The translations under genes and the position numbers were made by a program. This document shows, one piece after another, positions 11,005 through 43,112 of a stretch of 64,000 bases of DNA. The stretch is taken from the IMG/VR virus record IMGVR_UViG_3300023278_002893, positions 233,726 to 297,725 of that record; one strand, written 5' to 3'. Each line of letters starts with the position of its first letter. Position 1 is the stretch's first letter. The notes under the pieces are model-generated. The model did no database searches. It had not been told where the DNA came from and was given only the letters and a program-made list of their open reading frames with translations.

Positions 11005-11085
11005 ATAAATGACTAGGAGGTCAATATACATCTTCCCCCTTGAGATATAATGGGAGATAATATTGCCTTAGGGACCCTAGCATAG

Positions 11086-11106
11086 TTACCTCACCTTGTG
11101 AGGTAA
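11086..11106. promoter_or_regulatory. 21-bp palindromic box TTACCTCAC-CTT-GTGAGGTAA
   Basis: Perfect 9-bp arms; near copies at 11180-11200 and 12490-12510. Confidence 0.8.
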
Positions 11107-11364
11107 TCATTGTTTATACCCCCCTCCTCCGTCGAGGGATATACACATTGATTAACTATGCTACACGCGCTACCACTTGTTACCTCACTGCGTGAGCTAA
11201 TAATTCTCGCTTCGCTCGAATTAGACATGTCGTCTACTTCCAGCAAGCTGAAAGGAGACACCATGTCACGACACGGAGGTCGCAAGCTCCCTCGTCACTG
11301 AGCTTGTCTAACGCAGCACTCATGCTGCACCGCACGGAGAGCTACGCTCTACCGTGCAGGAGGT

Positions 11365-11559
11365 ATGACTATGTCATCCCCCACGCTCGTGCTCCGTGTT
11401 CCGACCTGCGACGCTGTCGATTGCATCGACCCCAGCGCAGGGTGCTACCCCGCACTCGATGTCTTCGAAGATATCGAGCTGTGCGTACATCACGAGAGTG
11501 AGTACGCCACTGCGGGTCGCATCAATGAGAGCGATCGACTCGTCGATCACTCTTCCTGA
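11365..11559 (+). CDS. small Cys/His acidic protein (array module)
   Basis: AGGAGGT RBS; followed by hairpin 11566-11588. Confidence 0.7.
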   Translation: MTMSSPTLVLRVPTCDAVDCIDPSAGCYPALDVFEDIELCVHHESEYATAGRINESDRLVDHSS

Positions 11560-11670
11560 TGCTTGGGGACCCCCCTCTGGGGGGTCCCTGTGGTTACCTC
11601 TCCGAGGTACCCTTCTATCCCTCGCTTCGCTCGGGTACCCCATCACCACGTGGATCTCGCTGCGCGAGCC

Positions 11671-11723
11671 CTAGTTGCATCACTTCGTGATACAATCATT
11701 TCTCGCTTATCACTCGAAAGGAG
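11671..11723 (+). promoter_or_regulatory. promoter/RBS module, copy 1 (box + extended -10 TGaTACAAT + GAAAGGAG)
   Basis: Near-identical to 12174-12225. Confidence 0.8.
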
Positions 11724-11729
11724 TATGAC

Positions 11730-11903
11730 ATGCCCAGTCTCGTCTTCGACTTTGACTGTTCCTGTGAGGTCCTCCCTTCGGGGGACCTCTGGTGCTGCGA
11801 TGTGTGCAGCACCGAAGCTGACCCTTGGGGTCAGCTTGCTACCGAAGAATCCGATCGGATTCTCGGACACAACACCTTCCTCGATATCTCTCGAAAGGAG
11901 TAG
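11730..11903 (+). CDS. 57-aa Cys-rich micro-protein
   Basis: AAAGGAG RBS; MPSLVFDFDCSCEVLPSGDLWCCDVCSTE...; below the ORF-track cutoff. Confidence 0.65.
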   Translation: MPSLVFDFDCSCEVLPSGDLWCCDVCSTEADPWGQLATEESDRILGHNTFLDISRKE

Positions 11904-11906
11904 ATC

Positions 11907-12029
11907 ATGCTCGAACAATTCGCTATCGCTCTTGTCCCCACCATCGCGTTGCTCTTGGTGGGTCGCTTGATCTGGATCACCGATCCAGAGGTCAAGCGAC
12001 TGCGCAAAGCTGAGCAGAAGCTCAGCTAG
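11907..12029 (+). CDS. 40-aa single-TM peptide
   Basis: AAAGGAG RBS; MLEQFAIALVPTIALLLVGRLIWITDPEVKRLRKAEQKLS. Confidence 0.7.
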   Translation: MLEQFAIALVPTIALLLVGRLIWITDPEVKRLRKAEQKLS

Positions 12030-12035
12030 CGCATC

Positions 12036-12064
12036 GGACCCCCCTAACGGGGGGTCCTCTTTTT
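12036..12064 (+). terminator. intrinsic terminator
   Basis: GGACCCCCC-TAAC-GGGGGGTCC followed by TCTTTTT. Confidence 0.85.
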
Positions 12065-12173
12065 ACAGCACCGACCCGCTTCGCTAAGTCGGTCTTGTTC
12101 ATTTACTCGTGAGTACCCCCTTCGGGGGTACCAACGAGCACCGCTCGTTCCTCGCTCTCGTCGTTCCTCCTCA

Positions 12174-12225
12174 CTAGTTGCATCACTTTGTGATACAATC
12201 ATTTCTCGCTATCGCTCGAAAGGAG
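12174..12225 (+). promoter_or_regulatory. promoter/RBS module, copy 2
   Basis: ctagttgcatcactttgtgatacaatcatttctcgctatcgctcgaaaggag. Confidence 0.8.
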
Positions 12226-12229
12226 ATCC

Positions 12230-12460
12230 ATGTTTATCATTCTTCTCGATTCCTCGAAGAACGAACTCCGCGTCGTCCGTGCTGACTCTGTCAGCGACTC
12301 CGGGACGCGGGTCGTTGTGGTTCCTCACCACAACGGTCACTCGTACGACTTCGAACTCCCTCCGGGAGTCGAAGCCTTCGCAGACCTCGCTACCTTCGAC
12401 GATGTCGAAGCTGCGTGGTCGTCGGTTCGCACCGACTTCTGCCCCTCGCTCCACCCCTAG
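12230..12460 (+). CDS. hypothetical protein (array module)
   Basis: RBS from the module; C-ending codons. Confidence 0.75.
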   Translation: MFIILLDSSKNELRVVRADSVSDSGTRVVVVPHHNGHSYDFELPPGVEAFADLATFDDVEAAWSSVRTDFCPSLHP

Positions 12461-12579
12461 CGGGGTGGGGTGTCCCCCTTCGGGGGTAGTTACCTCACTC
12501 TGTGAGGTAATACTTCTCTGGGTACTAGCGTACCCTTTGAAGTATTATCTTTCTCGTTAATCTCTCGAAAGGAGACTCT

Positions 12580-13059
12580 ATGCGTTGCTCGTTCTGTAAC
12601 GATCCCCGTGGGATCATCATGGTTGATGGTATCCCCGAGCCCTGCTGTGATGAGATCATCACGCAGCAAGTCCGCGAAGTACGCGGCATCTGTGTCAATT
12701 GTGGGGAATCCCACACTCGCATGAACGAGGGTGTAGACACCCTCTCCGCCATGTGCTCCGATGAGTGCCTCACCGAAGCCATGGATCGCATCGAAGCAAT
12801 CGCGCTGCGCGACGATTGTGGCGGTGAGATGCCCGACCAGGAGGTCATGGACCTCCATGACTCCGTCGATCGTATCGACGCAGCCAACCTCGCGTGGTAC
12901 CGCCACGCGGGTCAGTACATCGACAACGGTGTCGATGACTGTCTCGGTACTCCTCCCTTCTGGTTGGAGTACTCGATAGAGCGCGACGCTCTGGAGAGCG
13001 ATGCACGCATCGCTAAGCTCCAGAACGACGAGCACAAGTACGGGTGTATCCCGTTCTAG
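12580..13059 (+). CDS. acidic Cys-rich protein ending in IPF
   Basis: GAAAGGAG RBS; CxxC/CC/CxxC/CxxxC; followed by hairpin 13066-13085. Confidence 0.8.
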   Translation: MRCSFCNDPRGIIMVDGIPEPCCDEIITQQVREVRGICVNCGESHTRMNEGVDTLSAMCSDECLTEAMDRIEAIALRDDCGGEMPDQEVMDLHDSVDRIDAANLAWYRHAGQYIDNGVDDCLGTPPFWLEYSIERDALESDARIAKLQNDEHKYGCIPF

Positions 13060-13144
13060 TGCTCTGGTCCCCCTAGCGGGGGACCTACCGCTCCGCTCTC
13101 GCTTCGCTCACTAGTTCCTCCACTTCGTGAAGGAGGTCACTCAC

Positions 13145-13219
13145 ATGACCAAGTTGATCCTGTGCACCTACGCTCCGCTGCTCTACTTGCTTGCGGAATT
13201 CGCTTCACTCATCCCTTAA
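13145..13219 (+). CDS. 24-aa hydrophobic peptide
   Basis: AAGGAGGT RBS; MTKLILCTYAPLLYLLAEFASLIP. Confidence 0.55.
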   Translation: MTKLILCTYAPLLYLLAEFASLIP

Positions 13220-13237
13220 CCAAGAAGGAGCTACGCT

Positions 13238-13291
13238 ATGGATGATCTCGACCGCGACATCCAGGACGTCATTGACGACCTGTGCGAATAG
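13238..13291 (+). CDS. 17-aa acidic peptide
   Basis: GAAGGAG RBS; MDDLDRDIQDVIDDLCE; followed by a 15-bp hairpin. Confidence 0.5.
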   Translation: MDDLDRDIQDVIDDLCE

Positions 13292-13799
13292 ACCCATGTG
13301 GGTAGGAGTGCGTTACCGCGCACTCCTGCCCACCCGCTTCGCTCGCTACGCTCGCTCGCTCCTCTAAGAGCAAGGGAGGACTCTGTTGAGTCCTACTCCA
13401 GTACCGCTCGTCCCTCGCTCTCGCTTCGCTCACTCCCCTTCGGGGATAGTCCCATCACTTCGTGATCGGTAGTACATTTTTTTCGCTCATCGCTCAAAAA
13501 GGAGTCCTCCATTGGATGGATGACACCCCACAGCTACCTGCCCGAGCACGGCTTGGTAGCACCACGGGGGCCGTAGTGCTCCCTCCGCTGCGAGACGCAG
13601 TACAAGCAGTGACCTGCTTGTGGCGGAGGTTGATCAGCTCGCTTCGCTCGCTAACGGATGCTCCGCATCCTTAGAGACCCGGAGCGTCCCCCCTACGGGG
13701 GGTAGTTTCACCGCTGCGCGATGAAGTATCGGTTCTTGCGAACCTCGTTGTTAGACCACAGTGGTCTGATGCAGGGTTCGCTTGATAGGAGGACATGAC

Positions 13800-14156
13800 A
13801 TGTCCAATGCAGTAAAGACCACGATCAAGAAGTTTTCGTTCACGAAGTGGATCAGTGAGATCGAAGGTTCGGGTGCTCGCGTACTCGGATTCTGTGAGAT
13901 GACGGTCTGCGTCGATGGTCTGGAGTTCACGTTCAGTGACCTGAAGGTTCGCGTGAATCAGAAGGGTGAGCATCACCTGTGCGCACCGAGTCGTCGCTAC
14001 AAGAACTCCGAAGGTGCCTGGAGGACGTCGAGCGCGTACAAGTTCGACAATTCGACGTATGCTGCTCTGCGCAGTTTCGTCTACGGTCGCGACGAAGTGA
14101 AGGTCGCGATCGACGAAGCCGCGGATCTCGAAAAGGAGATTCCGCTGAGCGCGTAG
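13800..14156 (+). CDS. SpoVG-like nucleic-acid-binding protein #1
   Basis: AGGAGG RBS; VLGFCEMTV...FSDLKV...HHLCAPSRRYKNSEGAWR resembles the SpoVG pattern DIRVI...LFVAMPSK...GEFRD. Confidence 0.7.
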   Translation: MSNAVKTTIKKFSFTKWISEIEGSGARVLGFCEMTVCVDGLEFTFSDLKVRVNQKGEHHLCAPSRRYKNSEGAWRTSSAYKFDNSTYAALRSFVYGRDEVKVAIDEAADLEKEIPLSA

Positions 14157-14771
14157 TACATAGCAGTACCTCTAAGTAGGGGTACTGCTAGTCCCACCCC
14201 ACCGCTTCCCGGGGGGTGGGACCTCGCTCTCTTTCTGCTATCACGCGTGCTCATTGAGAAATGAAGGACTCTGATGAGTCCTCCTTTATTGACGTTCGCT
14301 TCGCTCTCTCTCAGTTCCTCCGCTTCGCTCCCCCCTTCGCTATAGTCTCCGCATTCTCTGGATGCGGTTACTATTATAAGAGACCCTCTAACGAGGAGTC
14401 TCTTTTTTTATTGACGCGCGCTGTTGCTCGGTGGATTCGTTCGGTACTGTTCATTCGGTGGTTGATTCGTTTACTCTCATTTGTTAGGGCACCACCCCAG
14501 TAGACGAAACTAATTACGGAGATATCAATTCCTTACGGAAACGCTGATTTACTCGTCGTCGCTGTGCTCCTCGTTGTTCCTTCTTTTTTTGATCTTTCAT
14601 CTCGGTGCACCATTCGTAGAGATATCTATGGATGCACGCCCGTCGGATACGTAAGTACTTGCAATACTCCGACAGTGCTTTATCGATACGTCTAGGTAGT
14701 TCCTAGCGGACGAGATGGGAGATCTTTTTTCGCGGCCGCTCAAAAAAGCCTATTACAAGGAGATTAGAAAC

Positions 14772-14903
14772 ATGGAACACATCCTCAAGAAGATGGCTGT
14801 ACCCAACATCTTGCACTGCGCAGAACTAGTGGTTCTGACCATCGTCGTGCATTTGGCCTCAGGATTGGTATTCTTACCATTATTCATCCCGAGGCAAGAA
14901 TAA
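14772..14903 (+). CDS. 43-aa membrane peptide
   Basis: AAGGAG RBS; hydrophobic C-terminal half. Confidence 0.5.
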   Translation: MEHILKKMAVPNILHCAELVVLTIVVHLASGLVFLPLFIPRQE

Positions 14904-15818
14904 ACCCAACCCCGAAGAAGATAGGAGATCAAACCCATGTTCTACACAATACTACTAATGGTACTGAAAGAATACAAGGACAGCAACAATCCATTCACCT
15001 GAGAGACCCCTCAGTTGAGTTAGACCACCCAGGAGGGATGGGACACTGGTAGGTGGTGGTCAGCTTTTACCAGGCGGTGACATCATTTTGCTCGGCGGAC
15101 AAATCAATAGTAATTTCAAATAGATAGAGTAAATATGTAGGGCTCTGACGTTACTACAGTAGGGGGTTTCGCGCGTCCCTGTCCAGGTGACTCATTCATT
15201 AGGAGATCGATCTCTGGGTGAAACCCTTCTGTATTGCTTCTTACGAATTATTCACTATACTCAGAATTTTCACCCGCCGGATAAAACACCCAATATCACC
15301 CTGTACTCAAACTGAATAAGGCTAGAACCCCCCTAGACAAGAAGAACTCCAGTAGTGCCCTCTGTTAGAGCCAATTGTATTACTGCTTTAGCAGATTCAT
15401 TGCAAGCATGGTGATGATTTACCTGTTGTACTCCCAGTATGCCTCTGTATCGATCCATGCTCATCGATCGATGTAGTTGATTTCATTGAGGAATTTAGTG
15501 TAGTGAAATGGTAAATGCCAATAGGTCGATCAAGTGGGTGTGATCGAGTACCCCGTATTAGTTGAATAGGTCGGTCTGTGTTGGTGCTTTGGCACCCCAT
15601 GAGGGGTCTAGGTTGTTCCTTCATTTTGATGTTCTGTGCTCCCATGTGCTTGGTTTCGTTGATGATTGGAGCCGGGGGTGGAGTGTGAGGGGAACGTGTA
15701 GGAGAAGCGAAGTGTGAGCGTCTCAGGTACCACCTGTGAGAGCTAGTGAGTACAGAGGAGAGTTAATCCATTACCGGTTTCTACCGGGAACATGCCTATT
15801 AGAGGCGGGAGAACTATT

Positions 15819-16109
15819 ATGTTGGAGAAGAGACAGCCGAGAGGAAAGACAATAAGATGCTGGAGCAGGAACGGTGAGCCCCTCGATCCCGGTGCAGAAC
15901 TCCACATGGAGCTGTTAAAACTAGAACACGTGTACTGGCGCAATGAGCTGACAGCGTGCGACGATTGCGGCACAGCTATACCCAATCGCGATCTTCGACT
16001 TACTCCATATGGATTGGTATGTGAGGATTGCAGAGAGACCGTCAAGAAGACAAGAATCAACTTGGGTAGGTTTCTACGTAAATGGGAACCTAGCGGAGAG
16101 GCATGCTAG
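15819..16109 (+). CDS. hypothetical Zn-finger protein
   Basis: CDDC...CEDC; start chosen after GGGAG. Confidence 0.6.
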   Translation: MLEKRQPRGKTIRCWSRNGEPLDPGAELHMELLKLEHVYWRNELTACDDCGTAIPNRDLRLTPYGLVCEDCRETVKKTRINLGRFLRKWEPSGEAC

Positions 16110-16167
16110 ACTGTTTTATCCGCCGCTGAAAAATGCCAATAACCCTGGGAGGGGAAAGGAGAGAATC

Positions 16168-16732: not shown

Positions 16733-17265
16733 CGGACGAGCTAAAAGAATCTTCGACACCGCGAAATGCGTCAAAGGGTAAGCCTTTCAACCTTACCCGC
16801 GCCACTCGCAAAGAGGTATTAGCACAATGCGTTAATCGTTAGAACCGCACGACCTTGAACAAACAACTGAATAGTACCAAGTGCTAGATGTCTCTGCCAT
16901 GGGACAGGTGGTAATGTCTAGGCAGGCGCGTAACGGAACAGCTGACCGCTAACCTTAAGGTTATGTTATGCCTGACGACTCGTCATACGGTTCATTGCCC
17001 CATTAGAGAGCAAGTTTAACGACGCACGGCAACTTCCTTTAAACAGGACAGTAGCTAGATGCCGGAACCTCTGCTCTCTCAATCTATTCGTAGGGATGGT
17101 TCTGTTTCCTTGCGTTGTTTCTTCGTTTTCTGAATTTTAATTGGGTCGGTTGCCAGCCGTTAAAGGTGTGATAAGGTGTGTATCACGTGGCGAAGATGGA
17201 AGCATCGCCTGATTGATTTTGATTTTGATTTGCGGCTGACAAAATCGGCCAGAGAGGACTAATCA

Positions 17266-17454: not shown

Positions 17455-17465
17455 GGAGAATCATC

Positions 17466-18679: not shown

Positions 18680-19033
18680 CATGCACAGAGAAATACACTT
18701 GAGCACGAAGGAACTCGAATCCATCGTGATGGAACACTATGCTCGTGAAGGTCATGAGCCTCGATTGGTGCGTCTATTTCTGAATCAGCCGAGTTAGTAG
18801 GAGGGGAAGTACTTACCGGTAGGGGTGTAAGTAATCCTCACTGGTGCTTGGTAGTGCCTATCATTACGTTTGCTACCTGTCAGATATACACGAGGGGGGT
18901 TGTCCCCTCGTTTCTCGGGGATCGTCGCTAACGCTCCTCGTTGTTTCCTCACTTTGTGAGGAGCCTCGCTCTCGCTCGGTCGGTGTCACGAGCAAGAGCA
19001 TATATGTAATAGACACCAGGAGAACCATCAAAC

Positions 19034-19603
19034 ATGAGTGAGCAAACAGCCAAAGTTGATCGAACCACGGACAAGTACCGCCGGCAGTGCGAAGCCATCT
19101 GGGAGGATTACGCGCCCCATTCGGTCATCGAGGACTTCGTCGAGTGCATTCGATTCGACCCGAAGTCGACCCTCCTCGGTTTCGTCAATCTCACGATTGG
19201 AATCAAGACCGCATGTGGGCACATCGCGAAGTTCGGGGTGATTGGAATCAAGGTGAAGTGCCTCAATAGAAAGTTCATCCTCGACTTCCCGTCTCAGAAG
19301 TCGAAGACCGACGGCAACTACTACCCGGTCTGCTTTCCGTACACGCCGTGGGAGCGTGACGTGATCACCACCATGGTCATGAACACCGCCAGCGTGCAGG
19401 AAGCGGCGAAGCATGCAGAAGAACAGGCGAAGGCGAACGAAGTCGCGCAAGACACAGCCACACCCGTGGATGCCGTCCATGCCGAGGAGAACCTCTTCGG
19501 AGACGAACTCGATCTCGAACCCGCAACCGAGGTGCCCGCCGACCTGGATCTCTCCGAGGACACGGCAACCGCCGTCGCAAGTGAAAATCCGTTCGAAGCG
19601 TAA
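19034..19603 (+). CDS. SpoVG-like protein #2 with acidic tail
   Basis: LLGFVNLTI...GIKVK...FILDFPSQKSKTDGNYYPVCFP...RDVITTMVM; ends ENPFEA. Confidence 0.75.
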   Translation: MSEQTAKVDRTTDKYRRQCEAIWEDYAPHSVIEDFVECIRFDPKSTLLGFVNLTIGIKTACGHIAKFGVIGIKVKCLNRKFILDFPSQKSKTDGNYYPVCFPYTPWERDVITTMVMNTASVQEAAKHAEEQAKANEVAQDTATPVDAVHAEENLFGDELDLEPATEVPADLDLSEDTATAVASENPFEA

Positions 19604-20500: not shown

Positions 20501-20706
20501 TTGGAAAATCAACCCGACAACAAGTCAATACCGCCCTTCGAAAGGAAGCGTGGTATATCGTAGCCACGTTAGTAACGCTGTTAGTCGCACTACGCATCAT
20601 CTATTAGGGGATATCCCAGCGTGTGACTCATTCCTTGAATGCGCAAGGGTTGTTGCTTCATTTTGTGAGTTGTAATATTAACCTCCCAGAGTAAGGAGCT
20701 ACTACG

Positions 20707-23235: not shown

Positions 23236-23489
23236 AACTAAGCAGTTGAGGTGCTCCACCTCTTGCACTTGAATCCCCAAGGTCGGGGTGGGTGTCCCAC
23301 TCGGGATACTCACCCCGATTAGTTTATACCACCGGTAGAAATATGAATCTCCTACAGGGATGAATTATTTCTACCCTCCATGGATTATATCAACTTAGTG
23401 GCCTAGTAATGCTTACTGGTGTGTATTGTTGCGCGATCCTGGTTGAACAGGTAGTTCCTTCTCGTTCCGACAGATAGGAGAGTATCATC

Positions 23490-25463: not shown

Positions 25464-25522
25464 TTGGTTGTTTCTTCGTTTCATGAATACCCAACTAGTG
25501 AGTAAATCGAAAGGATCGAATA

Positions 25523-29170: not shown

Positions 29171-29458
29171 AGTTGTTTCTGCACTTAGTGAGTTCCATGG
29201 TATCCCGAAGGTGTTTGTCCTCACCTTCCGCGTTCAAGCCGCGATCATTAGATGGGATACCAACAAGGTGGCGTACGCCGGGAGTGCCTGCATTCACTCC
29301 TGGGGTGCGCCACTAGTAGGAATATCTTTTTTTGTAAGTGTGCTGAAGATCGCGCTTATAGTTCATGCAATTCGTTCGATGATTTACACTCTGTACCATC
29401 AAGTAGTGCTAACTAGTGAGTTTGCGCGTACCTGATTGGTCTTTACTGAGGTGCCAAC

Positions 29459-31044: not shown

Positions 31045-31284
31045 ATGCGGAAGATCATAAGAGTAGGGTTGTTGCTTCTGGTTGTGCTGTCATCTACAGC
31101 CCAGAAGTGCGACGATGGAATGTCGGGAGAGTCCCGCCAAGGTAATGCTGTAGGGGTGAAAGATCACTACAAGCAGATAGATAGACCGGTAAGTGCTGTC
31201 CCTGAGCCCTCAGCTTGGATAATGTTTCTGGCCGGGGGAATCATCATCTACAAGTCAGTTGGGAAAAACAAGAAGAAGGAGTAG
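31045..31284 (+). CDS. minimal PEP-CTERM protein
   Basis: Signal-like N-terminus; AVPEPSAWIMFLAGGIIIY-KSVGKNKKKE. Confidence 0.75.
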   Translation: MRKIIRVGLLLLVVLSSTAQKCDDGMSGESRQGNAVGVKDHYKQIDRPVSAVPEPSAWIMFLAGGIIIYKSVGKNKKKE

Positions 31285-31673: not shown

Positions 31674-32246
31674 ATGAAAGAAATATTCGGGAATCTGTTC
31701 AAATGTGTGAAAGCCGAAGCCATCTGTATTACCACCAATGGATACGTGAAGAAGAACGGTGGTGTGGTAATGGGACGAGGATGTGCGTTGGAAGCAACCA
31801 AGCGTTGGCCCGGGGTTGAGGATCTGGTAGCACACAGCCTGAGTGGGGGTAAGAACGTCCCGACCCTGCTTACCCTGCCGCAGGAGGAGAATCCAAATAT
31901 CACTCTCCTGCCCACGCCAATGGCCAATTACATCGTTCCGTATCACGTCGTGACCTTCCCTGTGAAGCCAATCAGATGTGGTGGAGACCAGTTGTTGCCC
32001 CGTTTTCAGAACGACAACACCAGCAGGACCTCGGTTCATCCAGGGTGGATGAGCCAAGCCAAACCCTCCCTCATCCAGCACTCTGCGAAGCTCCTGGTTG
32101 AGCTGACAGACAAGCATGGGTGGAGTAGTGTCATCATACCCAAGCCGGGATGCGGAGCTGGTGGCCTCGATTGGAAGGATGTCAAGCCTTTGATAGCCGA
32201 CATTCTGGATGACAGGTTCTATCTGATCACTTTTCCAAAGAGGTAA
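31674..32246 (+). CDS. macrodomain (ADP-ribose processing, DarG/Poa1p-like)
   Basis: AICITTNG...MGRGCALEA...VVTFPVK...IPKPGCGAGGLDWKDVKPLI. Confidence 0.85.
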   Translation: MKEIFGNLFKCVKAEAICITTNGYVKKNGGVVMGRGCALEATKRWPGVEDLVAHSLSGGKNVPTLLTLPQEENPNITLLPTPMANYIVPYHVVTFPVKPIRCGGDQLLPRFQNDNTSRTSVHPGWMSQAKPSLIQHSAKLLVELTDKHGWSSVIIPKPGCGAGGLDWKDVKPLIADILDDRFYLITFPKR

Positions 32247-33965: not shown

Positions 33966-33967
33966 CC

Positions 33968-34633
33968 ATGAGTGTGGTGATGAGACTACTAATCTATGTG
34001 TTCATCGCCATCGGTTTCATTATGAGGTTTCTACCGAAGCGACGAGGTAGAAGAAGGATACCCCAACCCCCTATGTTCGTCGCGGCGAGACATAGATCAA
34101 CACCGCTTCGGCCTATGCGAGTGCCATGGACTGGTTCGACTGCTACGCGAAGATCAGTAGGATACTGCGAACAGACGGATTGCGAAAACTATGCGAAGGG
34201 AGTATTCCTTCTCAACCACGGCCAGCACTTCTACTGCCCTCGATGTCGAGAACCGGGGCGCATGGTGAGGGAGAGGGGTCACTATGAAGGCAGCTCCAAC
34301 GTCTTCAAGGAAGTGCGCTGCGAGTTCAACTACGACCCACTGAATGACAAGTATCGGGAGATTGGAATCGTACGCGACGACAGCCTTTGGGGAGACCACA
34401 ACGTCTATACGTTGCAATCGCCCCTCATCAAGACCGAGAAGCGGGCGCTCAAAGTGGCCGAGGCGATCCTCGCCAACCTCAACCGAGGGGGCGGGGTTGT
34501 ACAGGGAGAAGTACCTCATACCAATGAAGTAATCCTCTCCTTCGACGATTCACCAGAAGATTTCTCTCGTAAGCTCGCTGTGTTGGCGAAAGAATGGGAG
34601 AACAGTTCAATATCACAAGGAAGAAGAGCATGA
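33968..34633 (+). CDS. membrane-anchored Zn-binding protein, paralog of 46438..47196
   Basis: VGYCEQTDC...KGVFL...CPRC...ERG; KTEKRALKVAE; ILSFD. Confidence 0.75.
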   Translation: MSVVMRLLIYVFIAIGFIMRFLPKRRGRRRIPQPPMFVAARHRSTPLRPMRVPWTGSTATRRSVGYCEQTDCENYAKGVFLLNHGQHFYCPRCREPGRMVRERGHYEGSSNVFKEVRCEFNYDPLNDKYREIGIVRDDSLWGDHNVYTLQSPLIKTEKRALKVAEAILANLNRGGGVVQGEVPHTNEVILSFDDSPEDFSRKLAVLAKEWENSSISQGRRA

Positions 34634-34842
34634 GTTTGGTGACCCGTGCCCTGATCTTTGCTGCCGCTCACCACGAGGAGCAGAGGGATCGGGGAGGCAA
34701 TCCCTACATCTGGCATCCAATCCGCGTCGCCCTCTTTCTCCAAAAGAAAGGATATGTAGAGACCTATCAAGCTGTGGCTCTCCTTAGAACTATTCGATCA
34801 GCATCAGAGGATGCGATTGGAAAACAGGTGGCTCCATCGTAG
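34630..34842 (+). pseudogene. truncated RelA/SpoT-type HD hydrolase (Mesh1/SAH-like)
   Basis: RALIFAAAHHEEQRDRGGNPYIWHPIRVA matches the HD_4 N-terminus, but the HDxxED motif is absent after AVALL. Confidence 0.65.
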
Positions 34843-35279: not shown

Positions 35280-35424
35280 GAGAGTTGAGTTATCCAACGG
35301 GTGGTACTTCCTCGTGAAAGAGGAACTCCAGAGTAATCAAGTAAGATAATCCTACTAGAATCTCAAAAAAGAAGTGCTGCTGGGTAGTTTCGCGCGTCGG
35401 TAGCCATTCATTAGGAGGTGTCCT

Positions 35425-37168: not shown

Positions 37169-37195
37169 AGGGTAGTAAGGAGAGTTGGTAATAAA

Positions 37196-37717: not shown

Positions 37718-37779
37718 ACGGATATCGGAGGCTGCCTCATCCGGGGCAGCTCGCCCGGTTCCCATTCCAGGAGTCATTC

Positions 37780-38280
37780 GTGTCCGGCGAAGATGAAGTT
37801 AGTGGTAAATTGATTCAGCTGAATGTCCATCCAAAGTATCGGGATCCCAGCGCTGATGAACCTCTCAACTTTGACCTCGCACTATCCGAAGAAGAACAGC
37901 GGGATCTCGATGACTTCATGTCGGGAGAGGTGGTGGACTTAGATCTACCCGAGCTGAATGAACCGAGCGCAGCCTGCTACCAAGGAATAGGGAACAGCGC
38001 CTGCTACCTTTGCGTACACTGCGAAGATACTCGGCGATGGTGGGAAAGAATACGCACCACTCTTACCAAAGACTTCGTCTGCACAGCAACCCGACTGGAG
38101 GCCACACGTCATCCCGTCAGCGGAGAAAAAAAATACCTGGAAAGAGTAAGGGGAGCACTCGGCTGGGTAGATGCATTGGTAGATGTCCCACATCAGCTTT
38201 GTCAGGCACTAAATCCGGATGGACATTGTCCTGAGTTTCTTTTGAGTCTCCCAAAGAGCAGGCGATCCGAGAAGGAATAA
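37780..38280 (+). CDS. Cys-rich hypothetical protein
   Basis: AGGAG RBS before GTG; CYLCVHC...C...CQALNPDGHCPEF. Confidence 0.7.
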   Translation: MSGEDEVSGKLIQLNVHPKYRDPSADEPLNFDLALSEEEQRDLDDFMSGEVVDLDLPELNEPSAACYQGIGNSACYLCVHCEDTRRWWERIRTTLTKDFVCTATRLEATRHPVSGEKKYLERVRGALGWVDALVDVPHQLCQALNPDGHCPEFLLSLPKSRRSEKE

Positions 38281-38415
38281 CTAAGGTTGTTTCTTCATTT
38301 GTTGATCACATTTCTGAGTGCGTTACATGGACGCACTGAGAAAGAATCCACTAGGGATTCTTTTCATACCGAGGATATCTTAGGATATTCTCTCAAGAGC
38401 ACGTAGGAGATATCA

Positions 38416-38919
38416 GTGAACACTGCTGACCGGAAGTTTGAATTGAGAACATCGTCCCGCAGAAATGGCATCACTGCCGTTCTCGCCGAGGGTTTGGAAA
38501 TGACAGTCACCGTCATTGGATTGACGGATCCCCGTCGGTTGACTCGGAACGAACATGCATATGCCGTTCTGGACATCAATACCGGTTTGGTTCCAATTCG
38601 TGTGCGAGACATCAAGCTCGTGTTCAGTCCGAACAAGAAACGGCTCATCGTCAAGTGGCGGAAGTGGAAGACGGGTTTCAGGCGGGGCGACTGCGACGAG
38701 TGGCTCGACATCGCCGGCCCGCCGAAGCAGGAAGACAGAGAGGCTCTCGATGAGATAATCATTGCGGTCTACAAGCAGATCGTTCAGGAGAGCGAGAACG
38801 GAACGTTGGGGCAGAACAACCTCGACAAGCTGGAAGAGCTGAGAGCCTCCCTGGAAGCGGATAGTTCGGACTCGGCGCCCGCCGGCGATCCCGATACCGA
38901 AGCGGAGCAGAGCGCGTAA
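38416..38919 (+). CDS. SpoVG-like protein #4 with acidic tail
   Basis: HAYAVLDI...IRVRDIKLV...LIVKW...EWLDIAGP.KQEDREALDEIIIAVYKQ. Confidence 0.7.
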   Translation: MNTADRKFELRTSSRRNGITAVLAEGLEMTVTVIGLTDPRRLTRNEHAYAVLDINTGLVPIRVRDIKLVFSPNKKRLIVKWRKWKTGFRRGDCDEWLDIAGPPKQEDREALDEIIIAVYKQIVQESENGTLGQNNLDKLEELRASLEADSSDSAPAGDPDTEAEQSA

Positions 38920-39008
38920 ACCTCGACGTAAGAGAAGATCGAGGATCAAGTGTCGGGTGAAGAGGAGGAGGCGCACGTCTCCTCTTCTTCCCCGACAAAG
39001 GAGTAGGC

Positions 39009-39458: not shown

Positions 39459-39667
39459 TTTGATCGCGCCGATAAAAATTCCATCTGAAAGCCCTTTGAA
39501 CTAAAGGGTGGAACCAGAAGGAAGTAATAGGTACTACCCGAAGGAATAACTAGGGTTGTTTCTTCACTTCGTGAAGTAGGAACCGACGAGTTGGAGGCAG
39601 TCTTCAAGTCGTCACCAAAACGCAACAAGTTGTCCCGGCTAAGCGCCGGGATGAGGAGACCAAGTAT

Positions 39668-40198
39668 ATGAACGCCAACAATTGCATCATTGTGGGACGC
39701 CTCGCGCGTGCCCCGGAACTGAATATGGGCTTCAAGACCAGCGCCGGCGAGCAAGGCTACCGCTGTTTCATGAGGATCGCGGTCACTCGGATGAGCGATC
39801 TCGCAAAGCCGCGGAAGGAGCAGCGCGCCAACTTCGTCCCCGTTGTTTGCTGGGGGAAGCTCGCGAAGAACAGCGCCGAGTATCTCGATGTGGGTACGGA
39901 GGTGACGGTCATCGGTGAGTTCATGGCCGACAGCCGCCCGAAGCTCAACGGCGCCGGGGAGCACATCGTCGTCGAGGGGAAGAAGCAGTATCACCCCGAG
40001 TCGCTCCACCTCAACGCCTCGTCGATCCAGTTCGGACAGCGCTCGCTGAAGAACAAGAACGGAGGTACCGAGGTTGGTGCCGATGTGAGCACGGAGACTC
40101 CCGCCGGAGAACCCGCCGCTGCCGAGGCTCCGACGCCTGCCGCAGCCGGAGCGAACGGAGACAACCCGTTCGGAGAAGCCGACGCCGCCACGGCGTAG
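39668..40198 (+). CDS. ssb: single-stranded DNA-binding protein
   Basis: NNCIIVGRLARAPEL...FVPVVCWGKLAKNSAEYLDVGTEVTVIG; acidic tail DNPFGE. Confidence 0.9.
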   Translation: MNANNCIIVGRLARAPELNMGFKTSAGEQGYRCFMRIAVTRMSDLAKPRKEQRANFVPVVCWGKLAKNSAEYLDVGTEVTVIGEFMADSRPKLNGAGEHIVVEGKKQYHPESLHLNASSIQFGQRSLKNKNGGTEVGADVSTETPAGEPAAAEAPTPAAAGANGDNPFGEADAATA

Positions 40199-40234
40199 CG
40201 GTCTCTCACAAGCAGTAAATTGCAGTAATAAATT

Positions 40235-40277
40235 GGGGGGTTCCCTGGGTGTATGCCTAGGGAGCCCCCTTTTTTTT
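40235..40277 (+). terminator. intrinsic terminator
   Basis: GGGGGTTCCCTGGG...CCTAGGGAGCCCCC followed by a T8 run. Confidence 0.85.
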
Positions 40278-40624
40278 CGTCAGGATAGCGACCGCGTGCT
40301 GGCATACAAGATCGCGACGGAATGCGCTGAAAAGATTATTCTGGATAATGCCCAACCCGAGCAAGAAGGAGGTTGAACGAAAATGTTTGATCCATTGGGA
40401 GTAATTCTGTATCTTCTGATAAGTATCGGCACTGTCGGTATTCTCTTGGAGAATCCGAATTTTCAAGCGTGGAATATCACATCATTTCAGTGAACTTCTG
40501 GGTAGAAGTAGAGAAGTTTCCAGAGAAGAGAGGTCGAGTAAGATGCGTGCCGGGAGAAAGAAACAATGAATGAAACCATTCGCACAATAGTCGCATCCAG
40601 CCATTATAAAGGGACAATAAGAAC

Positions 40625-40849
40625 ATGACCACACGTATGAGTTTCCCAGAAAGACGTGAGCTGCGTCGTAAAGAAGCAGAAGCGCGGCAGGTAGAGAAAG
40701 ACCAACGCGGAGACGCTGGTCAGCTCAGACACTTAGAAAGTAATGGCTTCGGAGATTGTAAGGAGGCACGTCGCCTTCGTATCGCACTCCTCGGAGGTGA
40801 GCCGGAAGCAATTGAAATTGCGCCGGACAAGGAGCGGAAAGTTGAGTAA
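40625..40849 (+). CDS. hypothetical protein
   Basis: Charged helical composition; overlaps the next ORF. Confidence 0.6.
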   Translation: MTTRMSFPERRELRRKEAEARQVEKDQRGDAGQLRHLESNGFGDCKEARRLRIALLGGEPEAIEIAPDKERKVE

Positions 40850-41047
40850 CGGAAACATCAGTGGTGGGAAGATCGCGCCGGTGATCGCCCTCGTCTTCTT
40901 CATGTTCGCAGGTTTCGCCGTCATGGGCGGTGTGAGTTTCTTCAACGAATCGACCCGGCAGATGAACGCCTATCAAGGCAAGCTCGATGCCAACAACGCC
41001 GACTTCGACAAGATGTGGAAGGTGGGCTTGGAGTTGATCTAAATTAT

Positions 41048-41123
41048 TCCGGAGTAGCTCAGCTGGTAGAGCATCTGACTCTGAATCAGAAGGTCGAAGG
41101 TTCGAATCCTTCCTCCGGATCCA
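41048..41123 (+). tRNA. tRNA-Gln(CTG)
   Basis: TCCGGAG/CTCCGGA acceptor; TCTGA-CTCTGAA-TCAGA; GGTTCGAATCC; T73, CCA encoded. Confidence 0.95.
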
Positions 41124-41169
41124 TAAAAAACAAATAGGTATCAGGGCAGAGGAAGAAAGGACTTTACAA

Positions 41170-41490
41170 ATGACTAATGCTGAAACTCTGATAAGTTTTC
41201 CCTGGGCTGTGATGGATATTGTAAGTAATTACACCATCCAAATAATTCACGACAGCTCTGATCTAGCCAATGATCTACTTCTAACTCCGCCCAATCGAAG
41301 TGCAATTCTGGAGGAGTGTTTTCTCCGCCTCCTTCCGGAATATGAATGGACGCAGGAAGAACACCTCCAAGGTATGTGGTGCAATACAGTGGAAGATTTG
41401 GTTGAATTCTTCGAGGACATCATTGTTGGTGAAAAGAAAGAAAAGCCGGCGGCGGGAGATTTCTTTTTCAACTTCGCCGGATGTAAATAG
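41170..41490 (+). CDS. hypothetical protein between the two tRNA-Gln genes
   Basis: AAGGA RBS. Confidence 0.65.
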   Translation: MTNAETLISFPWAVMDIVSNYTIQIIHDSSDLANDLLLTPPNRSAILEECFLRLLPEYEWTQEEHLQGMWCNTVEDLVEFFEDIIVGEKKEKPAAGDFFFNFAGCK

Positions 41491-41498
41491 TTCCCTAT

Positions 41499-41572
41499 TC
41501 CCCGGTCGTCTAACGGCAGGACAGTAGCCTTTGAAGCTGCGCATCGTGGTTCAAATCCACGTCGGGGATCCA
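41499..41572 (+). tRNA. tRNA-Gln(TTG)
   Basis: TCCCCGG/TCGGGGA; GTAGC-CTTTGAA-GCTGC; GGTTCAAATCC; CCA. Confidence 0.95.
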
Positions 41573-41597
41573 TAAGCCAGGAGACGGCTAGCAACCC

Positions 41598-42608
41598 ATG
41601 AAAGGAAAAATCGTGACTAACGAAAGAGAAGCGGAGCTTCGCAAATTTGAATCCCAAGCCATGCGCATGGTTAGGGCTTACTTACTAAAAGAAGTTTATC
41701 ACGATGCCGATCACGAAGAACTCGCCAAGACCTGGGGTGTAAAAATTCGCAAGGTCAGGCAGCTTTTACTCTTCGAGATCCCGAAGTTTCATGAAATAGT
41801 ACAACTTCTCGATCTCGCTGGTTTTGATCTTGGTATTGCTATCCACGATCCGGGTTCCGGCAAAGAAGTGACTCTTTACGCCGCAAATAATCTATCAGGG
41901 GAAGCGCCCATTGTTCCCAGAATCAAGGAACAAACTCCTAAGTATAAAACTCCAGACACGATCGCGACGGGTTCCGAGGAAGGATTGGATTTCCTCCCCG
42001 TCACGAACGAGAGAGCCGTAGATGGCTCCTTCGACATCGGCACGGAGCTAGGTCCCGATGCCATCGAGGGAGAATTCCAAGAAATCGACTCCAGAGACCT
42101 GCTAACTGTGATGATCGAAGAAGGTCAGCCTTGTGGTGGCTGCGGCCATCAGCCCCGGATGGCAGGTTCCACAATGTGTGAAAACTGTACTCGGGGTACA
42201 GATGTATCGGAGTCATCTCCCACAGAGGTTCAATTCTGCGAGAGATGTAAGTCCGCCGATCATCACGGTGAGGCGTTCTTCTGCGGTGAGTGCGGAACGA
42301 CCTTGGTTTGGAAAGCGACCAACCTCGTAGAGATGTATCTGAGAACGGGTCACCAAGCGGAGCTTGACCGCACTCGGGAATCGGATCTCTGCCATAACTG
42401 CCTGAATCATGCACCGATCCCTGATTCCGATCTTTGTCACTATTGCACCGTGATGGGAGTAGAGTGCGACATTCCAGAAGAGCCGGAAGAATCGGAATAT
42501 CCCCTCAGTTTGAACGCGAGGGTTGATCTGCACAAGGCAGACCAGTCGCGTTCGTCACATACAGAGAGACTCCTACGTCAGTCGGGTCTCATTGAAAGCG
42601 AGGAATAG
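41598..42608 (+). CDS. multi-Zn-ribbon protein with possible N-terminal HTH
   Basis: Six CxxC pairs; ELAKTWGVKIRKVRQLL. Confidence 0.7.
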   Translation: MKGKIVTNEREAELRKFESQAMRMVRAYLLKEVYHDADHEELAKTWGVKIRKVRQLLLFEIPKFHEIVQLLDLAGFDLGIAIHDPGSGKEVTLYAANNLSGEAPIVPRIKEQTPKYKTPDTIATGSEEGLDFLPVTNERAVDGSFDIGTELGPDAIEGEFQEIDSRDLLTVMIEEGQPCGGCGHQPRMAGSTMCENCTRGTDVSESSPTEVQFCERCKSADHHGEAFFCGECGTTLVWKATNLVEMYLRTGHQAELDRTRESDLCHNCLNHAPIPDSDLCHYCTVMGVECDIPEEPEESEYPLSLNARVDLHKADQSRSSHTERLLRQSGLIESEE

Positions 42609-42612
42609 AACC

Positions 42613-43038
42613 ATGAAATTGACCTTCGAACAGACCCAAGGCACTCGAACTTTTTATTTCCCCCTCGATCGTGACAAGGTCACTCCCCCGGAGTTCACCG
42701 TGGTCATCCGACCTCTCAACGGTGAGGACTTCGACTTTGATCCCAACGAAGACCAGTACGAAGCCGGAGTGGCTTTCTGCTCCAAGGACGACCAGTTCTC
42801 CAAGAGGAGAGGACGTCTTCTGGCGTACCACAGAATGTTCGGCAAGAATGCTTTCGTAGGCACCTCGACGGAAATCGCCCACGCAATCGAAGCCAAGCTA
42901 GATTTGTTGGTGTCCCGCCGGCCTTTCTCATTCAGTGCCCCTGCAATTCAGGACGTGCTGCACGTCATCGCGGCCGACGCTCTGGCCGGATACTTCAAGG
43001 CCAAGAAGGAGAATCGCGAAGCGGCGGCGAACGCCTAG
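42613..43038 (+). CDS. phage-type hypothetical protein
   Basis: AGGA RBS; GVAFCSKDDQFSKRRGRLLAY motif. Confidence 0.75.
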   Translation: MKLTFEQTQGTRTFYFPLDRDKVTPPEFTVVIRPLNGEDFDFDPNEDQYEAGVAFCSKDDQFSKRRGRLLAYHRMFGKNAFVGTSTEIAHAIEAKLDLLVSRRPFSFSAPAIQDVLHVIAADALAGYFKAKKENREAAANA

Positions 43039-43112
43039 AAGGAAACACAGTAGTTTCTTCAGGTAGTGAAGAAGTTTCTGTTTAGTGTGTTATAAAAAAC
43101 CTTTCAGAAGGA

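What the first reader, a model, noticed from the sequence alone, without database searches (positions are those of the whole stretch)
11085..43071. Directional 19-bp intergenic box TWGTT-N3-TC(AC)-N3-(GT)GA upstream of many plus-strand genes
Seen on the + strand at about 11085, 11179, 11674, 12177, 12489, 13114, 13449, 14573, 17114, 18940, 25467, 29172, 38286, 39555 and 43050. All but 25467 are clear of coding sequence, and that one starts just past a stop codon; most are ahead of an RBS. The copies at 38272-38297 and 39541-39566 share 25 of 26 bp. In the array the core expands to a 21-bp palindrome (TTACCTCAC-N3-GTGAGGTAA) or overlaps an extended -10. It precedes SpoVG #2, SpoVG #4 and the main SSB. 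Inference: a phage-specific promoter or operator defining a regulon.
Basis: partly seen in the sequence, partly recalled or inferred. Interest (0 to 1): 0.8.

Follow-up and report, generated by a model that had tools for sequence, protein, structure and literature searches.

The report
Phage-specific promoter-like box, jumbo phage
About nineteen copies of a 19-base one-directional sequence sit between rightward genes in a 32-kb stretch of an uncultivated 300-kb phage; relatives have it too, and it is most likely the start signal for a phage-directed class of transcripts, which is real but not a new kind of thing.

Summary
All 15 reported sites exist, within 1-2 nt. I add 15613 and 20650, and two weak sites at 13703 and 23452. 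At 12 bits or more the PWM finds 20 plus-strand and 1 minus-strand sites, against 0.7 per shuffle. Sixteen of 17 lie in the 23.5% non-coding DNA.

The window is the last 64 kb of a 297.7-kb metagenomic jumbo-phage contig. All exact copies of two sub-patterns on that contig fall at window 11-43 kb.

Leftward genes and the tRNA region carry near-perfect sigma-70 promoters. The box-bearing rightward region has none.

Relatives (46-67% helicase identity) carry the same kind of box (TAGTYnCYCC..CTT.YGA) in their intergenic gaps, partly at orthologous positions. There its 3' end abuts the ribosome-binding site, which rules out a -35 reading.

The TCAC-N3-GTGA hairpin covaries in this phage but is absent from relatives, so it is an add-on.

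Best reading (about 0.55): a promoter covering about -17 to +2 for a phage-specified polymerase or specificity factor. In the early array it is packaged in stem-loop/promoter cassettes like T4-type PeSLs. No transcript data and no cognate polymerase were found. Rivals are a transcribed RNA element and an operator.

The parts
11083..11101 (+). Class A box 1, perfect 9-bp-arm palindrome (TTACCTCAC-CTT-GTGAGGTAA). Followed by a structured 60-nt stretch with no ORF before the next box.
   Evidence: 24.1 bits; DNA hairpin -7.4 kcal/mol, z -4.9
11177..11195 (+). Class A box 2, upstream of small genes (11365-11559)
11672..11690 (+). Class A box 3 (GCA/TAC arms; TGaTACAAT), 39 nt before gene 11730-11903
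12175..12193 (+). Class A box 4, downstream of intrinsic terminator 12036-12057, 36 nt before gene 12230-12460
12487..12505 (+). Class A box 5, perfect palindrome, abutted on its 5' side by a CCCCC-TTCG-GGGGG hairpin. An RNA hairpin (z -4.7) begins exactly at box position 18.
13112..13130 (+). Class A box 6. The 3' arm contains the AAGGAGG ribosome-binding site of a 27-codon ORF (ATG 13135).
13447..13465 (+). Class A box 7 (TAGTC variant with compensating G at position 23), abutted by hairpin TCCCC-TTCG-GGGA
13703..13721 (+). Weak box (13.4 bits), abutted by hairpin CCCCCC-TACG-GGGGGG, 78 nt before gene 13800-14156
   Evidence: family D5
14574..14592 (+). Class B box in the 1.66-kb stretch without called genes
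15613..15630 (+). Class B box, one base shorter between core and TGA
17115..17133 (+). Class B box
18941..18959 (+). Class B box with 7-bp hairpin, 74 nt before SpoVG-like gene 19034-19603
20650..20668 (+).
23452..23470 (+). Weak box of the relatives' type (TAGTTCCTTC..CGA), 19 nt before gene 23490-23861. A second conserved motif lies directly upstream.
25468..25486 (+). Class B box, 4 nt after a stop codon and 36 nt before gene 25523-25903
29173..29191 (+). Class B box, 2 nt after a stop codon. Positional orthologues are L158:6249 and L159:1718.
29190..29338 (+). Strongly structured 149-nt stretch that starts at box position 18 and ends in a U7 run. Relatives have a hairpin plus U-run at the same place.
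   Evidence: -71.3 kcal/mol, z -7.1
38287..38305 (+). Class B box, 6 nt after a stop codon, before SpoVG-like gene 38416-38919. Positional orthologue is L277:19241.
39556..39574 (+). Class B box with 6-bp hairpin, before the SSB gene 39668-40198, which ends at strong terminator 40235-40270
43051..43069 (+). Last box (7-bp stem, 5-nt loop), at the head of an 11-kb gene block with few gaps
31069..31087 (+). PWM hit that is probably not a box: it lies inside the signal-peptide-like N-terminus of gene 31045-31284 and has the lowest leave-one-out score (14.6).
10875..11004 (-). Two sigma-70 promoters, TTGACA-17-TATTAT (11 of 12), for the leftward gene cluster. The same promoter is found in relative L280.
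10167..10195 (-). Perfect sigma-70 promoter TTGACA-17-TATAAT (12 of 12)
5392..5420 (-). Perfect sigma-70 promoter TTGACA-17-TATAAT (12 of 12)
54290..54318 (+). Sigma-70 promoter (11 of 12) ahead of tRNA-Arg. It marks the end of the box-served region.
12036..12057 (+). Intrinsic terminator between early cassettes

Best explanation
The box is the promoter of a phage-specific transcription class. It is a contiguous, asymmetric element of about 19 bp, TWGTTnCyTCAyTTyGTGA here and TAGTYnCYCCnnCTTyYGA across the clade. It is recognised as one unit by a phage-specified polymerase or promoter-specificity factor, not by the host sigma-70 holoenzyme. Transcription would start at or next to the invariant G-A at positions 18-19, so the box covers about -17 to +2, which is the geometry of T7-group and N4 promoters. 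About 19 such promoters serve the rightward genes from 11 to about 54 kb: small ORFan 'take-over' genes, SpoVG-like genes, SSB, helicase and others. The leftward replication and nucleotide-metabolism cluster and the tRNA block use host-type TTGACA/TATAAT promoters. In the seven-unit early array the promoter is part of a repeated cassette: G/C stem-loop, box, conserved leader, RBS, small gene. In this phage only, the box has been extended into a covarying stem-loop with a 3-nt loop. That stem-loop may help melting or extrusion on supercoiled DNA, or may add a regulatory layer. What is shown: existence, strand and intergenic bias, regional confinement, conservation in relatives, covariation of the arms, and the lack of sigma-70 promoters in that region. 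What is inferred: promoter function, the start point, and the nature of the polymerase.
For: (1) Strong enrichment with strand and intergenic bias. (2) All exact copies of two sub-patterns on the 297.7-kb contig lie in window 11-43 kb, and no other IMG/VR contig has more than one copy. (3) Leftward genes have four promoters at 11-12 of 12 in the window and three more in the next 21 kb, and the tRNA block has two. The plus strand from 11 to 54 kb has none at 10 of 12 or better, and no box occurs on the leftward gene strand. (4) In the early array genes are separated by terminators or G/C hairpins (for example 12036-12057 plus a T-run), so each unit needs its own start signal, and the box is the only recurring element. 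(5) Relatives L158, L159, L165, L277/L280 and L278 carry related boxes in intergenic gaps on the gene strand. With the window's PWM there are 7 hits at 11 bits or more against about 2.5 expected, and 6 of them are intergenic. Orthologous positions are 29173/L158:6249/L159:1718 and 38287/L277:19241. (6) In relatives, position 18 is only 14-19 nt from the start codon and the RBS follows at once. The start must therefore lie within or before the box, and a -35/-10 reading is impossible. (7) A pyrimidine-rich run is followed by the invariant G-A (Y at -1, R at +1). (8) Strong RNA structures begin 0-3 nt from position 18 at 12504, 11100, 29190, L158:6266 and L159:1735, as expected of 5'-terminal stem-loops. 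(9) The minimum distance from box to start codon in the window is a constant 36-39 nt at four sites.
Against: No transcript 5' ends are available, because no sequencing run was listed. No RNA polymerase or sigma gene was detected by Pfam in contig positions 214-297 kb, and the other 214 kb could not be read. A sigma-70-family gene sits next to the helicase in some relatives but is missing from that slot here and from the window. In L158 and L159, and probably at 29173, the box is followed almost at once by a hairpin plus U-run. A promoter there would yield only a short RNA or an attenuated leader. Covariation of both arms is hard to use if only the 3' arm is transcribed.
Confidence: 0.55

Rival explanations
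1. The box acts in RNA. It is transcribed as part of long rightward transcripts and serves as a processing site or as the binding site of an RNA-binding protein; the phage's several SpoVG-like proteins would be candidates. Cleavage or binding next to the upstream G/C hairpin would create stable upstream 3' ends and defined downstream 5' ends. The CU-rich half, which resembles an anti-Shine-Dalgarno sequence, can pair with nearby GGAG sequences.
For: Boxes often abut a stable G/C hairpin on their 5' side (family D5). Several start 2-12 nt after a stop codon with no terminator in between. Both arms covary, which is the usual signature of a transcribed stem-loop. In relatives the box lies directly before the RBS, its CTCC can pair with GGAG, and at 13112 the 3' arm is itself the RBS. 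In L158 and L159 the box lies between a stop codon and a terminator, like a 3'-UTR element.
Against: This would leave the rightward 43 kb without any recognisable promoter. After true terminators such as 12036-12057 a new start is needed, and nothing else is conserved there. The hairpin is missing in most class B copies and in all relatives, so a structure cannot be the common feature. No Rfam family matches. Nineteen nucleotides with two invariant blocks is long for a nuclease site.
Confidence: 0.2
2. The box is a DNA operator for a phage regulator. This could be a dimeric repressor on the palindromic early copies, or a directional roadblock of the 'stoperator' type of cluster A mycobacteriophages, used to shut off or time the rightward genes.
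For: Many oriented copies lie in short intergenic spaces, sometimes overlapping stop codons. There are 21-bp palindromes in the early array. Two copies overlap a plausible extended -10 (TGaTACAAT).
Against: The arm positions covary (A:T, G:C, C:G, T:A at 6:22 and 8:20) instead of keeping one half-site consensus. Most copies and all relatives are asymmetric. No sigma-70 promoter is present for such an operator to control. No repressor or integrase was seen in the window.
Confidence: 0.15
3. The boxes are weak host sigma-70 promoters, with TWGTTA as -35 and AATCAT or TACAAT as -10, and a conserved spacer.
For: Five class A copies have TAGTTA/G-16-AAT(C/A)(A/C)T. One was picked up by the consensus scan at 9 of 12. 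Site 20650 has TTGTTG-17-TAATAT.
Against: Class B has nothing like a -10 at the right distance. In relatives the start codon is 31-36 nt from the first base of the box, so a -35 reading would start transcription at or past the start codon, downstream of the ribosome-binding site. The invariant bases are in the would-be spacer. The same genome uses perfect consensus promoters elsewhere.
Confidence: 0.05

Closest known systems
T7-group single-subunit RNA polymerase promoters (T7, T3, SP6, K11)
   Same: A contiguous asymmetric element of about 19-23 bp, read in one direction and placed in short intergenic spaces, often right after a stop codon. There are one to two dozen copies per regulon. Host-type promoters are used for another gene class. 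An internal TCAC and a purine start after a pyrimidine-rich or AT stretch are also shared; the resemblance to ..CCCTCACT.. is recalled from memory and is only a lead.
   Different: No single-subunit polymerase gene was found in the 83 kb that could be read. The spacing between TCAC and the putative start is one base shorter. The motif is confined to 32 kb of a genome of about 300 kb. About half of the copies form a stem-loop.
Phage N4 virion RNA polymerase early promoters (PMC4496689)
   Same: The conserved region spans about -17 to +1 and contains an inverted repeat forming a short stem with a 3-nt loop. The stem mixes conserved and freely varying but complementary bases. The promoters are clustered at the head of the early genes. 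The loop centre on the template strand is a purine in 6 of 7 class A copies.
   Different: N4 has three such promoters with a G/C-rich heptamer. Here there are 7 hairpin copies plus about 12 copies with weak or no hairpin, and relatives have none. If the start is at position 18, it lies inside the 3' arm rather than 11 nt past the loop centre. No giant virion polymerase gene was seen in the region read.
PeSL cassettes (promoter-early stem-loop) of T4-type phages (PMC2839356, PMC4122927)
   Same: A composite stem-loop/terminator plus promoter, repeated between small ORFan genes in a plastic early region. G(n)-loop-C(n) hairpins lie next to the promoter. The repeats are well conserved and could drive cassette shuffling.
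   Different: PeSL promoters are host sigma-70 early promoters. The box here is not sigma-70-like and also occurs outside the ORFan array.
Stoperators of cluster A mycobacteriophages (L5 gp71 sites)
   Same: Many copies of an asymmetric site, oriented with transcription, in short intergenic spaces and at stop or start codons.
   Different: Stoperators are 13-14 bp, spread over the whole genome of a temperate phage, and bound by the immunity repressor. Here the element is 19 bp, regional, in an apparently lytic jumbo phage, and no repressor is known.
T4 middle promoters (MotA box plus sigma-70 -10)
   Same: A phage-specific upstream box replaces the -35 element, giving a distinct temporal class.
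   Different: T4 middle promoters need a TAnnnT -10 element 11-13 bp downstream. Class B and the relatives' boxes have none.

Membership tests
T7-type (single-subunit RNAP) promoter | Contiguous conserved element of about 17-23 bp, asymmetric, oriented with the downstream genes | tested here: met
   20-nt PWM of 19.5 bits; invariant T1, G3, T4, C7, C10, T17, G18, A19; all copies on the gene strand
T7-type (single-subunit RNAP) promoter | Transcription starts at a fixed base at the 3' end of the element | not testable with these tools
   No sequencing runs were listed. Indirect support only: the RBS follows position 19 at once in relatives, and RNA structures begin at position 18.
T7-type (single-subunit RNAP) promoter | Cognate phage-encoded single-subunit RNA polymerase gene | tested here: inconclusive
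   None was found by Pfam or PHROGs in contig positions 214-297 kb. The remaining 214 kb could not be fetched.
N4 virion-RNAP hairpin promoter | 5-7 bp stem with a 3-nt loop, complementarity kept by compensatory change | tested here: met
   Met for class A and for sites 18941 and 39556; site 43051 has a 7-bp stem but a 5-nt loop, so it does not meet the 3-nt criterion. Pairs 6:22 and 8:20 show 4-5 pair types, with 17 double-change cells against 5.8 in shuffles (0 of 500). DNA hairpins are -2.7 to -7.4 kcal/mol.
N4 virion-RNAP hairpin promoter | The hairpin is required in every promoter of the class | tested here: not met
   Sites 14574, 17115, 25468 and 38287 form no hairpin. The relatives' boxes have no inverted repeat at these positions.
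N4 virion-RNAP hairpin promoter | Giant virion-packaged RNAP gene; promoters at the genome end that is injected first | not testable with these tools
   The largest ORF in the window is 588 aa and is a LamG/Ig protein. Genome ends are unknown; the array is about 50 kb from the contig end.
Host sigma-70 promoter | -35 and -10 hexamers 16-18 bp apart, start about 7 nt after the -10 | tested here: not met
   Class B has no -10-like hexamer. In relatives the start codon is 31-36 nt from the first base of the box.
PeSL-type composite terminator/promoter cassette | Stem-loop plus promoter repeated between small ORFan genes in one region | tested here: met
   The hairpin-plus-box repeat occurs 3 times in register, the box family 5-7 times and the leader 5 times between genes of 40-159 codons.
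PeSL-type composite terminator/promoter cassette | The promoter is a host sigma-70 early promoter | tested here: not met
Stoperator (cluster A mycobacteriophage) | Cognate repressor and temperate life style; sites across the whole genome | tested here: not met
   Exact copies are confined to 32 kb of 298 kb. No repressor or integrase domain was found in the 83 kb read. Binding itself is not testable.
Known RNA family (Rfam) | Match to a curated covariance model | tested here: not met
   Only 15 tRNAs reach gathering scores in the window.

The most novel reading that the evidence does not exclude
An uncultivated clade of jumbo phages of about 300 kb runs two transcription regimes from one divergent junction. 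Host sigma-70 RNAP serves the leftward genes. A so-far unidentified phage polymerase, possibly injected with the DNA, serves the rightward genes and reads a 19-bp promoter. In this phage the earliest promoters have evolved N4-like extrudable stem-loops with a 3-nt loop. That would be a second, independent case of structure-assisted promoter recognition outside the N4-like phages.
Probability: 0.15. Interest if true: 0.75.

Novelty: new member of a known kind. Interest (0 to 1): 0.45.

Why it matters
If the box is a promoter, it gives a ready-made map of a temporal gene class (about 19 transcription units, 43 kb) in a jumbo-phage lineage known only from metagenomes. It would also predict that this lineage carries its own polymerase or specificity factor, which is still to be found. 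The side-by-side use of perfect host promoters on one strand and a non-host signal on the other is a clear, testable layout. The covarying stem-loop version offers a natural comparison with N4's hairpin promoters. The repeated stem-loop/box/leader cassettes extend the PeSL idea of shuffling small early genes beyond T4-type phages. It does not open a long-standing question, because phage-specific promoter motifs are common.

Tried and rejected
- DNA searches of the INPHARED phage collection found nothing, in near and distant modes. The helicase is at most 33% identical to any isolated phage.
The intended pattern is TCAC and GTGA.
A tighter pattern worked.
- No public sequencing run was listed for two stretches, so no read-level evidence was possible.
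- The idea that the box encodes a small leader peptide (TTG start, M-F-L-H-F-V) was rejected. There is no consistent Shine-Dalgarno sequence, ORF lengths vary from 7 to over 35 codons, and class A has no start codon.
- An intrinsic-terminator reading was rejected. Stems are A/T-rich and weak, there is no proper T-run, and most class B copies have no stem.
- The 217-aa protein in the slot where relatives have a sigma gene is not a sigma. It is a conserved zinc-ribbon protein with a paralogue at 46438-47196.
- The 588-aa leftward protein is a LamG/Ig protein, not a polymerase.
- Walking left along the contig reached position 214 kb and was then blocked by an incomplete 1571-aa gene; no polymerase was found.
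- GTDB genome scans found no close relative and gave no hint of the host.
- A literature search for jumbo phages with SpoVG genes or this motif found nothing specific.

Full report
**Where the window comes from.** The window is the last 64,000 bases of IMG/VR contig 3300023278_002893, which is JGI Ga0255981_100001 (297,725 bp). A 196.6-kb sister contig is identical over the region checked. Nothing in the isolated-phage collection matches at the DNA level, and the helicase is at most 33% identical to that of any isolated phage. This is an uncultivated jumbo phage. Genes at 1-10,858 run leftward. Everything from about 11,000 to 64,000 runs rightward, including 15 tRNA genes at 41-63.5 kb.

The minus-strand hits are only the reflections of the palindromic copies.
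- The sites fall into two sub-classes with the same frame.
  - Class A has seven copies at 11083-13447: TAGTT-nnn-TCAC-yty-GTGA-nnn-AAT, with 9-bp palindrome arms.
  - Class B has ten copies at 14574-43051: GTTGTTTCTTCAyTTnGTGAr.
- GTTGTTTCTTC at up to 1 mismatch occurs 11 times on the plus strand and twice on the minus strand, against 0.63 expected per strand.
- A 20-nt PWM (19.5 bits) gives leave-one-out scores of 14.6-28.6. At 12 bits or more there are 20 plus-strand hits, 1 minus-strand hit and 0.7 per shuffle.
- Sixteen of 17 sites lie in the 23.5% of the window that is non-coding (P about 1e-9).
- I add 15613, 20650 and two weak copies at 13703 and 23452.
- The 25-of-26 identity of the two extended copies is correct. 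So is the position of boxes ahead of two weak SpoVG-like genes and an SSB gene.

**The motif is regional and private to this phage.**
- The exact pattern TAGTT-N3-TCAC-N3-GTGA-N3-AAT gives 32 matching stretches in all of IMG/VR, about the number expected by chance. Only this phage's two contigs have more than one copy, and all four copies on the 297.7-kb contig are in the window.
- The pattern GTTGTTYCYTCRYTTNNTGA has five copies on the contig, all in the window. No other viral contig has two.
- This pattern catches 5 of the 11 class B-type sites in the window. A comparable density elsewhere on the contig would therefore have shown up.

**Two promoter regimes.**
- The leftward cluster carries TTGACA-17-TATTAT twice (11004, 10903) and perfect TTGACA-17-TATAAT twice (10195, 5420).
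- Three more promoters at 11 of 12 lie on the gene strand in the next 21 kb to the left, where no box occurs.
- The tRNA block has promoters at 11 of 12 at 54290 and 57411.
- Between 11 and 54 kb the plus strand has none at 10 of 12 or better. Weaker matches are no more frequent than in shuffles.
- The host enzyme's signal is therefore easy to see where it is used, and it is missing exactly where the boxes are.

**Anatomy of the early array.**
- From 11.0 to 14.6 kb the units repeat in this order: G/C stem-loop, box, conserved leader, ATG of a 12-159-codon ORFan.
- The stem-loops include CCCCC-TTCG-GGGGG directly abutting the first T of the box, and one full terminator at 12036-12057.
- The conserved leader is TTTCTCGCT.ATC.CTCGAAAGGAG, in five copies.
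- This is the layout of the PeSL composite terminator/promoter cassettes of T4-type phages (PMC4122927), except that the promoter part is not sigma-70-like.
- Further downstream, boxes sit in short gaps, four of them 2-12 nt after a stop codon. The closest they come to the next start codon is a constant 36-39 nt, seen at four sites.

**Relatives.**
- The helicase has relatives at 45-70% identity on large metagenomic contigs. I read their neighbourhoods as L158, L159, L164, L165, L277/L280 and L278. Gene order is collinear with window 22-39 kb.
- Their intergenic gaps hold the same kind of box on the gene strand:
  - L277/L280: ctaGG-TAGTTkCTCC..CTT.yGA
  - L278: TAGTCTCCyCC...CGA
  - L158: TAGTYnCCaC.CTTC.TGAT
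  - L159: TTTTCTCTCC...TGAT
  - L165: TATTCTCTCC..
- With the window's own PWM, three relatives (53 kb) give 7 plus-strand hits at 11 bits or more. About 2.5 are expected from the rate in 970 kb of unrelated loci. Six of the seven are intergenic.
- Two positions are orthologous. The box after the 230-aa gene and before the 189-aa gene is window 29173, L158:6249 and L159:1718. The box before a SpoVG-like gene is window 38287 and L277:19241.
- L280 shows that the divergent junction, the TTGACA-17-TATTAT leftward promoter and the CTCGCTTCGCTCG repeat are all conserved too.
- The clade-wide core is T-A/T-G-T-Y-n-C-Y-Y-C, then a pyrimidine-rich CTT stretch, then Y-G-A at positions 17-19.
- The TCAC/GTGA symmetry is not conserved outside this phage.

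**Geometry.**
- In relatives, position 18 of the box is only 14-19 nt from the start codon at four sites, and the GGAGG ribosome-binding site follows position 19 directly.
- The RNA must contain that site, so transcription must begin within or before the box. This rules out reading the box as a -35 element.
- A start at the invariant G18-A19, preceded by pyrimidines, would make the box span -17 to +2.
- The N4 review states that N4's early promoters are conserved from -17 to +1, around an inverted repeat whose stem holds both conserved and freely varying but complementary bases (PMC4496689). T7-group promoters have the same span; that point is my own recall.
- In line with a 5' end near position 18, strong RNA structures begin 0-3 nt from it:
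  - at 12504 (z -4.7) and at 11100;
  - at 29190, a 149-nt fold of -71 kcal/mol (z -7.1) followed by U7;
  - at the orthologous L158 and L159 sites, a hairpin plus U-run.
- The last group also shows that this particular box drives, or precedes, a short terminated RNA or attenuated leader.

**The hairpin.**
- On 16 aligned boxes, the stem pairing columns 4-12 with 16-24 is paired in 75.7% of cells against 67.5% in shuffles.
- There are 17 double-change cells against 5.8 in shuffles (0 of 500). The signal is lost when the partner columns are slid.
- Pairs 6:22 and 8:20 carry four to five different pair types.
- Hairpin stabilities are modest: -7.4 kcal/mol for the two perfect copies, -2.7 to -5.7 for the others, and none for several class B copies.
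- Complementarity is therefore selected in this phage, mainly in the early array, but it is not what defines the element. It argues against a plain dimeric-repressor operator, which would keep one half-site consensus.

**The missing factor.**
- Pfam and PHROGs searches and the pre-computed calls for contig positions 214-297 kb show no polymerase or sigma.
- Relatives L158, L159, L164 and L165 have a 204-aa sigma-70-family gene (regions 2 and 4) between a conserved 217-aa gene and an HD-domain gene. In the window those two genes overlap, and no sigma homologue exists anywhere in the 64 kb.
- Boxes occur with and without that nearby sigma, and the sigma gene lies inside the box-served region. 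It could also lie elsewhere in this genome.

**Verdict.** The element is real and directional. It is confined to one 32-kb region and conserved in a clade. The best explanation is a promoter for a phage-specified transcription class (confidence about 0.55). Rivals are a transcribed processing or binding element (0.2), an operator (0.15) and a host promoter (0.05). It is a new member of a known kind, so interest is moderate. The covarying N4-like stem-loop version and the strand-split use of host and non-host signals are the parts worth follow-up.

Noticed in passing
window 5392-5420, 10167-10195, 10875-10903, 10976-11004 (minus strand); 54290-54318, 57411-57439 (plus strand); L361 148, 4355, 12884: Near-perfect or perfect sigma-70 promoters (TTGACA-17-TATAAT/TATTAT) serve only the leftward cluster and the tRNA block. 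The split by strand and region is sharp.
   Followed up: partly
window 11208, 11623, 12077, 13100, 13335, 13422, 13640, 14297, 14321; L280 7281 and 7985: CGCTTCGCT(C) occurs 8-9 times, all on the plus strand and only in the early array, usually 2-100 nt upstream of a box. The same CTCGCTTCGCTCG occurs in the early region of a 46%-identity relative. Function unknown.
   Followed up: partly
window 11699-11723, 11876-11900, 12201-12225, 12550-12574, 13479-13503: Conserved 25-nt leader TTTCTCGCT.ATC.CTCGAAAGGAG directly before five early start codons. One copy (11876) has no box upstream.
   Followed up: no
window about 23430-23452, 29420-29445, 35400-35420; L158 gaps 1048-1267 and 6245-6438; L277 gaps 1964-2208 and 15870-15980; L278 gap 7439-7678; L164 7255-7335; L165 6072-6192: A second clade-wide intergenic motif, GTT(G/T)CGCG-n3-4-CTGGTYGAAC-like, lies shortly before ribosome-binding sites. 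It may be an RNA leader element or another promoter class.
   Followed up: no
window 29190-29338; L158 6266-6325; L159 1735-1800: After the orthologous box there is a very stable structure ending in a U-run (149 nt, -71 kcal/mol, z -7.1 in the window). It could be a small RNA gene or an attenuator ahead of the 189-aa gene.
   Followed up: partly
window 34630-34842 compared with L158 12786-13888: Relatives carry a sigma-70-family gene (204 aa) between the 217-aa gene and an HD_4 gene. Here the sigma gene is absent and the HD gene is cut to 70 codons, followed by a 245-nt gap.
   Followed up: yes
window 14157-15818: A 1.66-kb stretch without a called gene holds two boxes. Only short membrane-like ORFs are visible (for example 14772-14903).
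   Followed up: no
window 41048-63466: Fifteen tRNA genes, all on the plus strand, including two tRNA-Met, three tRNA-Arg, two tRNA-Gln and two tRNA-Glu.
   Followed up: no
window 33980-34633 and 46438-47196: Paralogous zinc-ribbon proteins are conserved next to the helicase in every relative. No family or fold match was found.
   Followed up: partly
window about 16120 and about 19770: A repeat, gatccgccgctgaaaaat(g/a)ccaat, sits in two intergenic gaps just before ribosome-binding sites.
   Followed up: no
window 31674-32246, 55008-55433, 50963-51859, 52765-53469; L279/L361: Gene content seen while annotating: a Macro-domain protein, an Acb5-family protein (anti-CBASS family name), a phiEco32-like COOH-NH2 ligase and a glutamine amidotransferase-like peptidase C26. 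To the left of the window there are clamp-loader subunits, an actin-like protein, an IMPDH-like protein, dCTP deaminase/dUTPase and a cold-shock protein.
   Followed up: no
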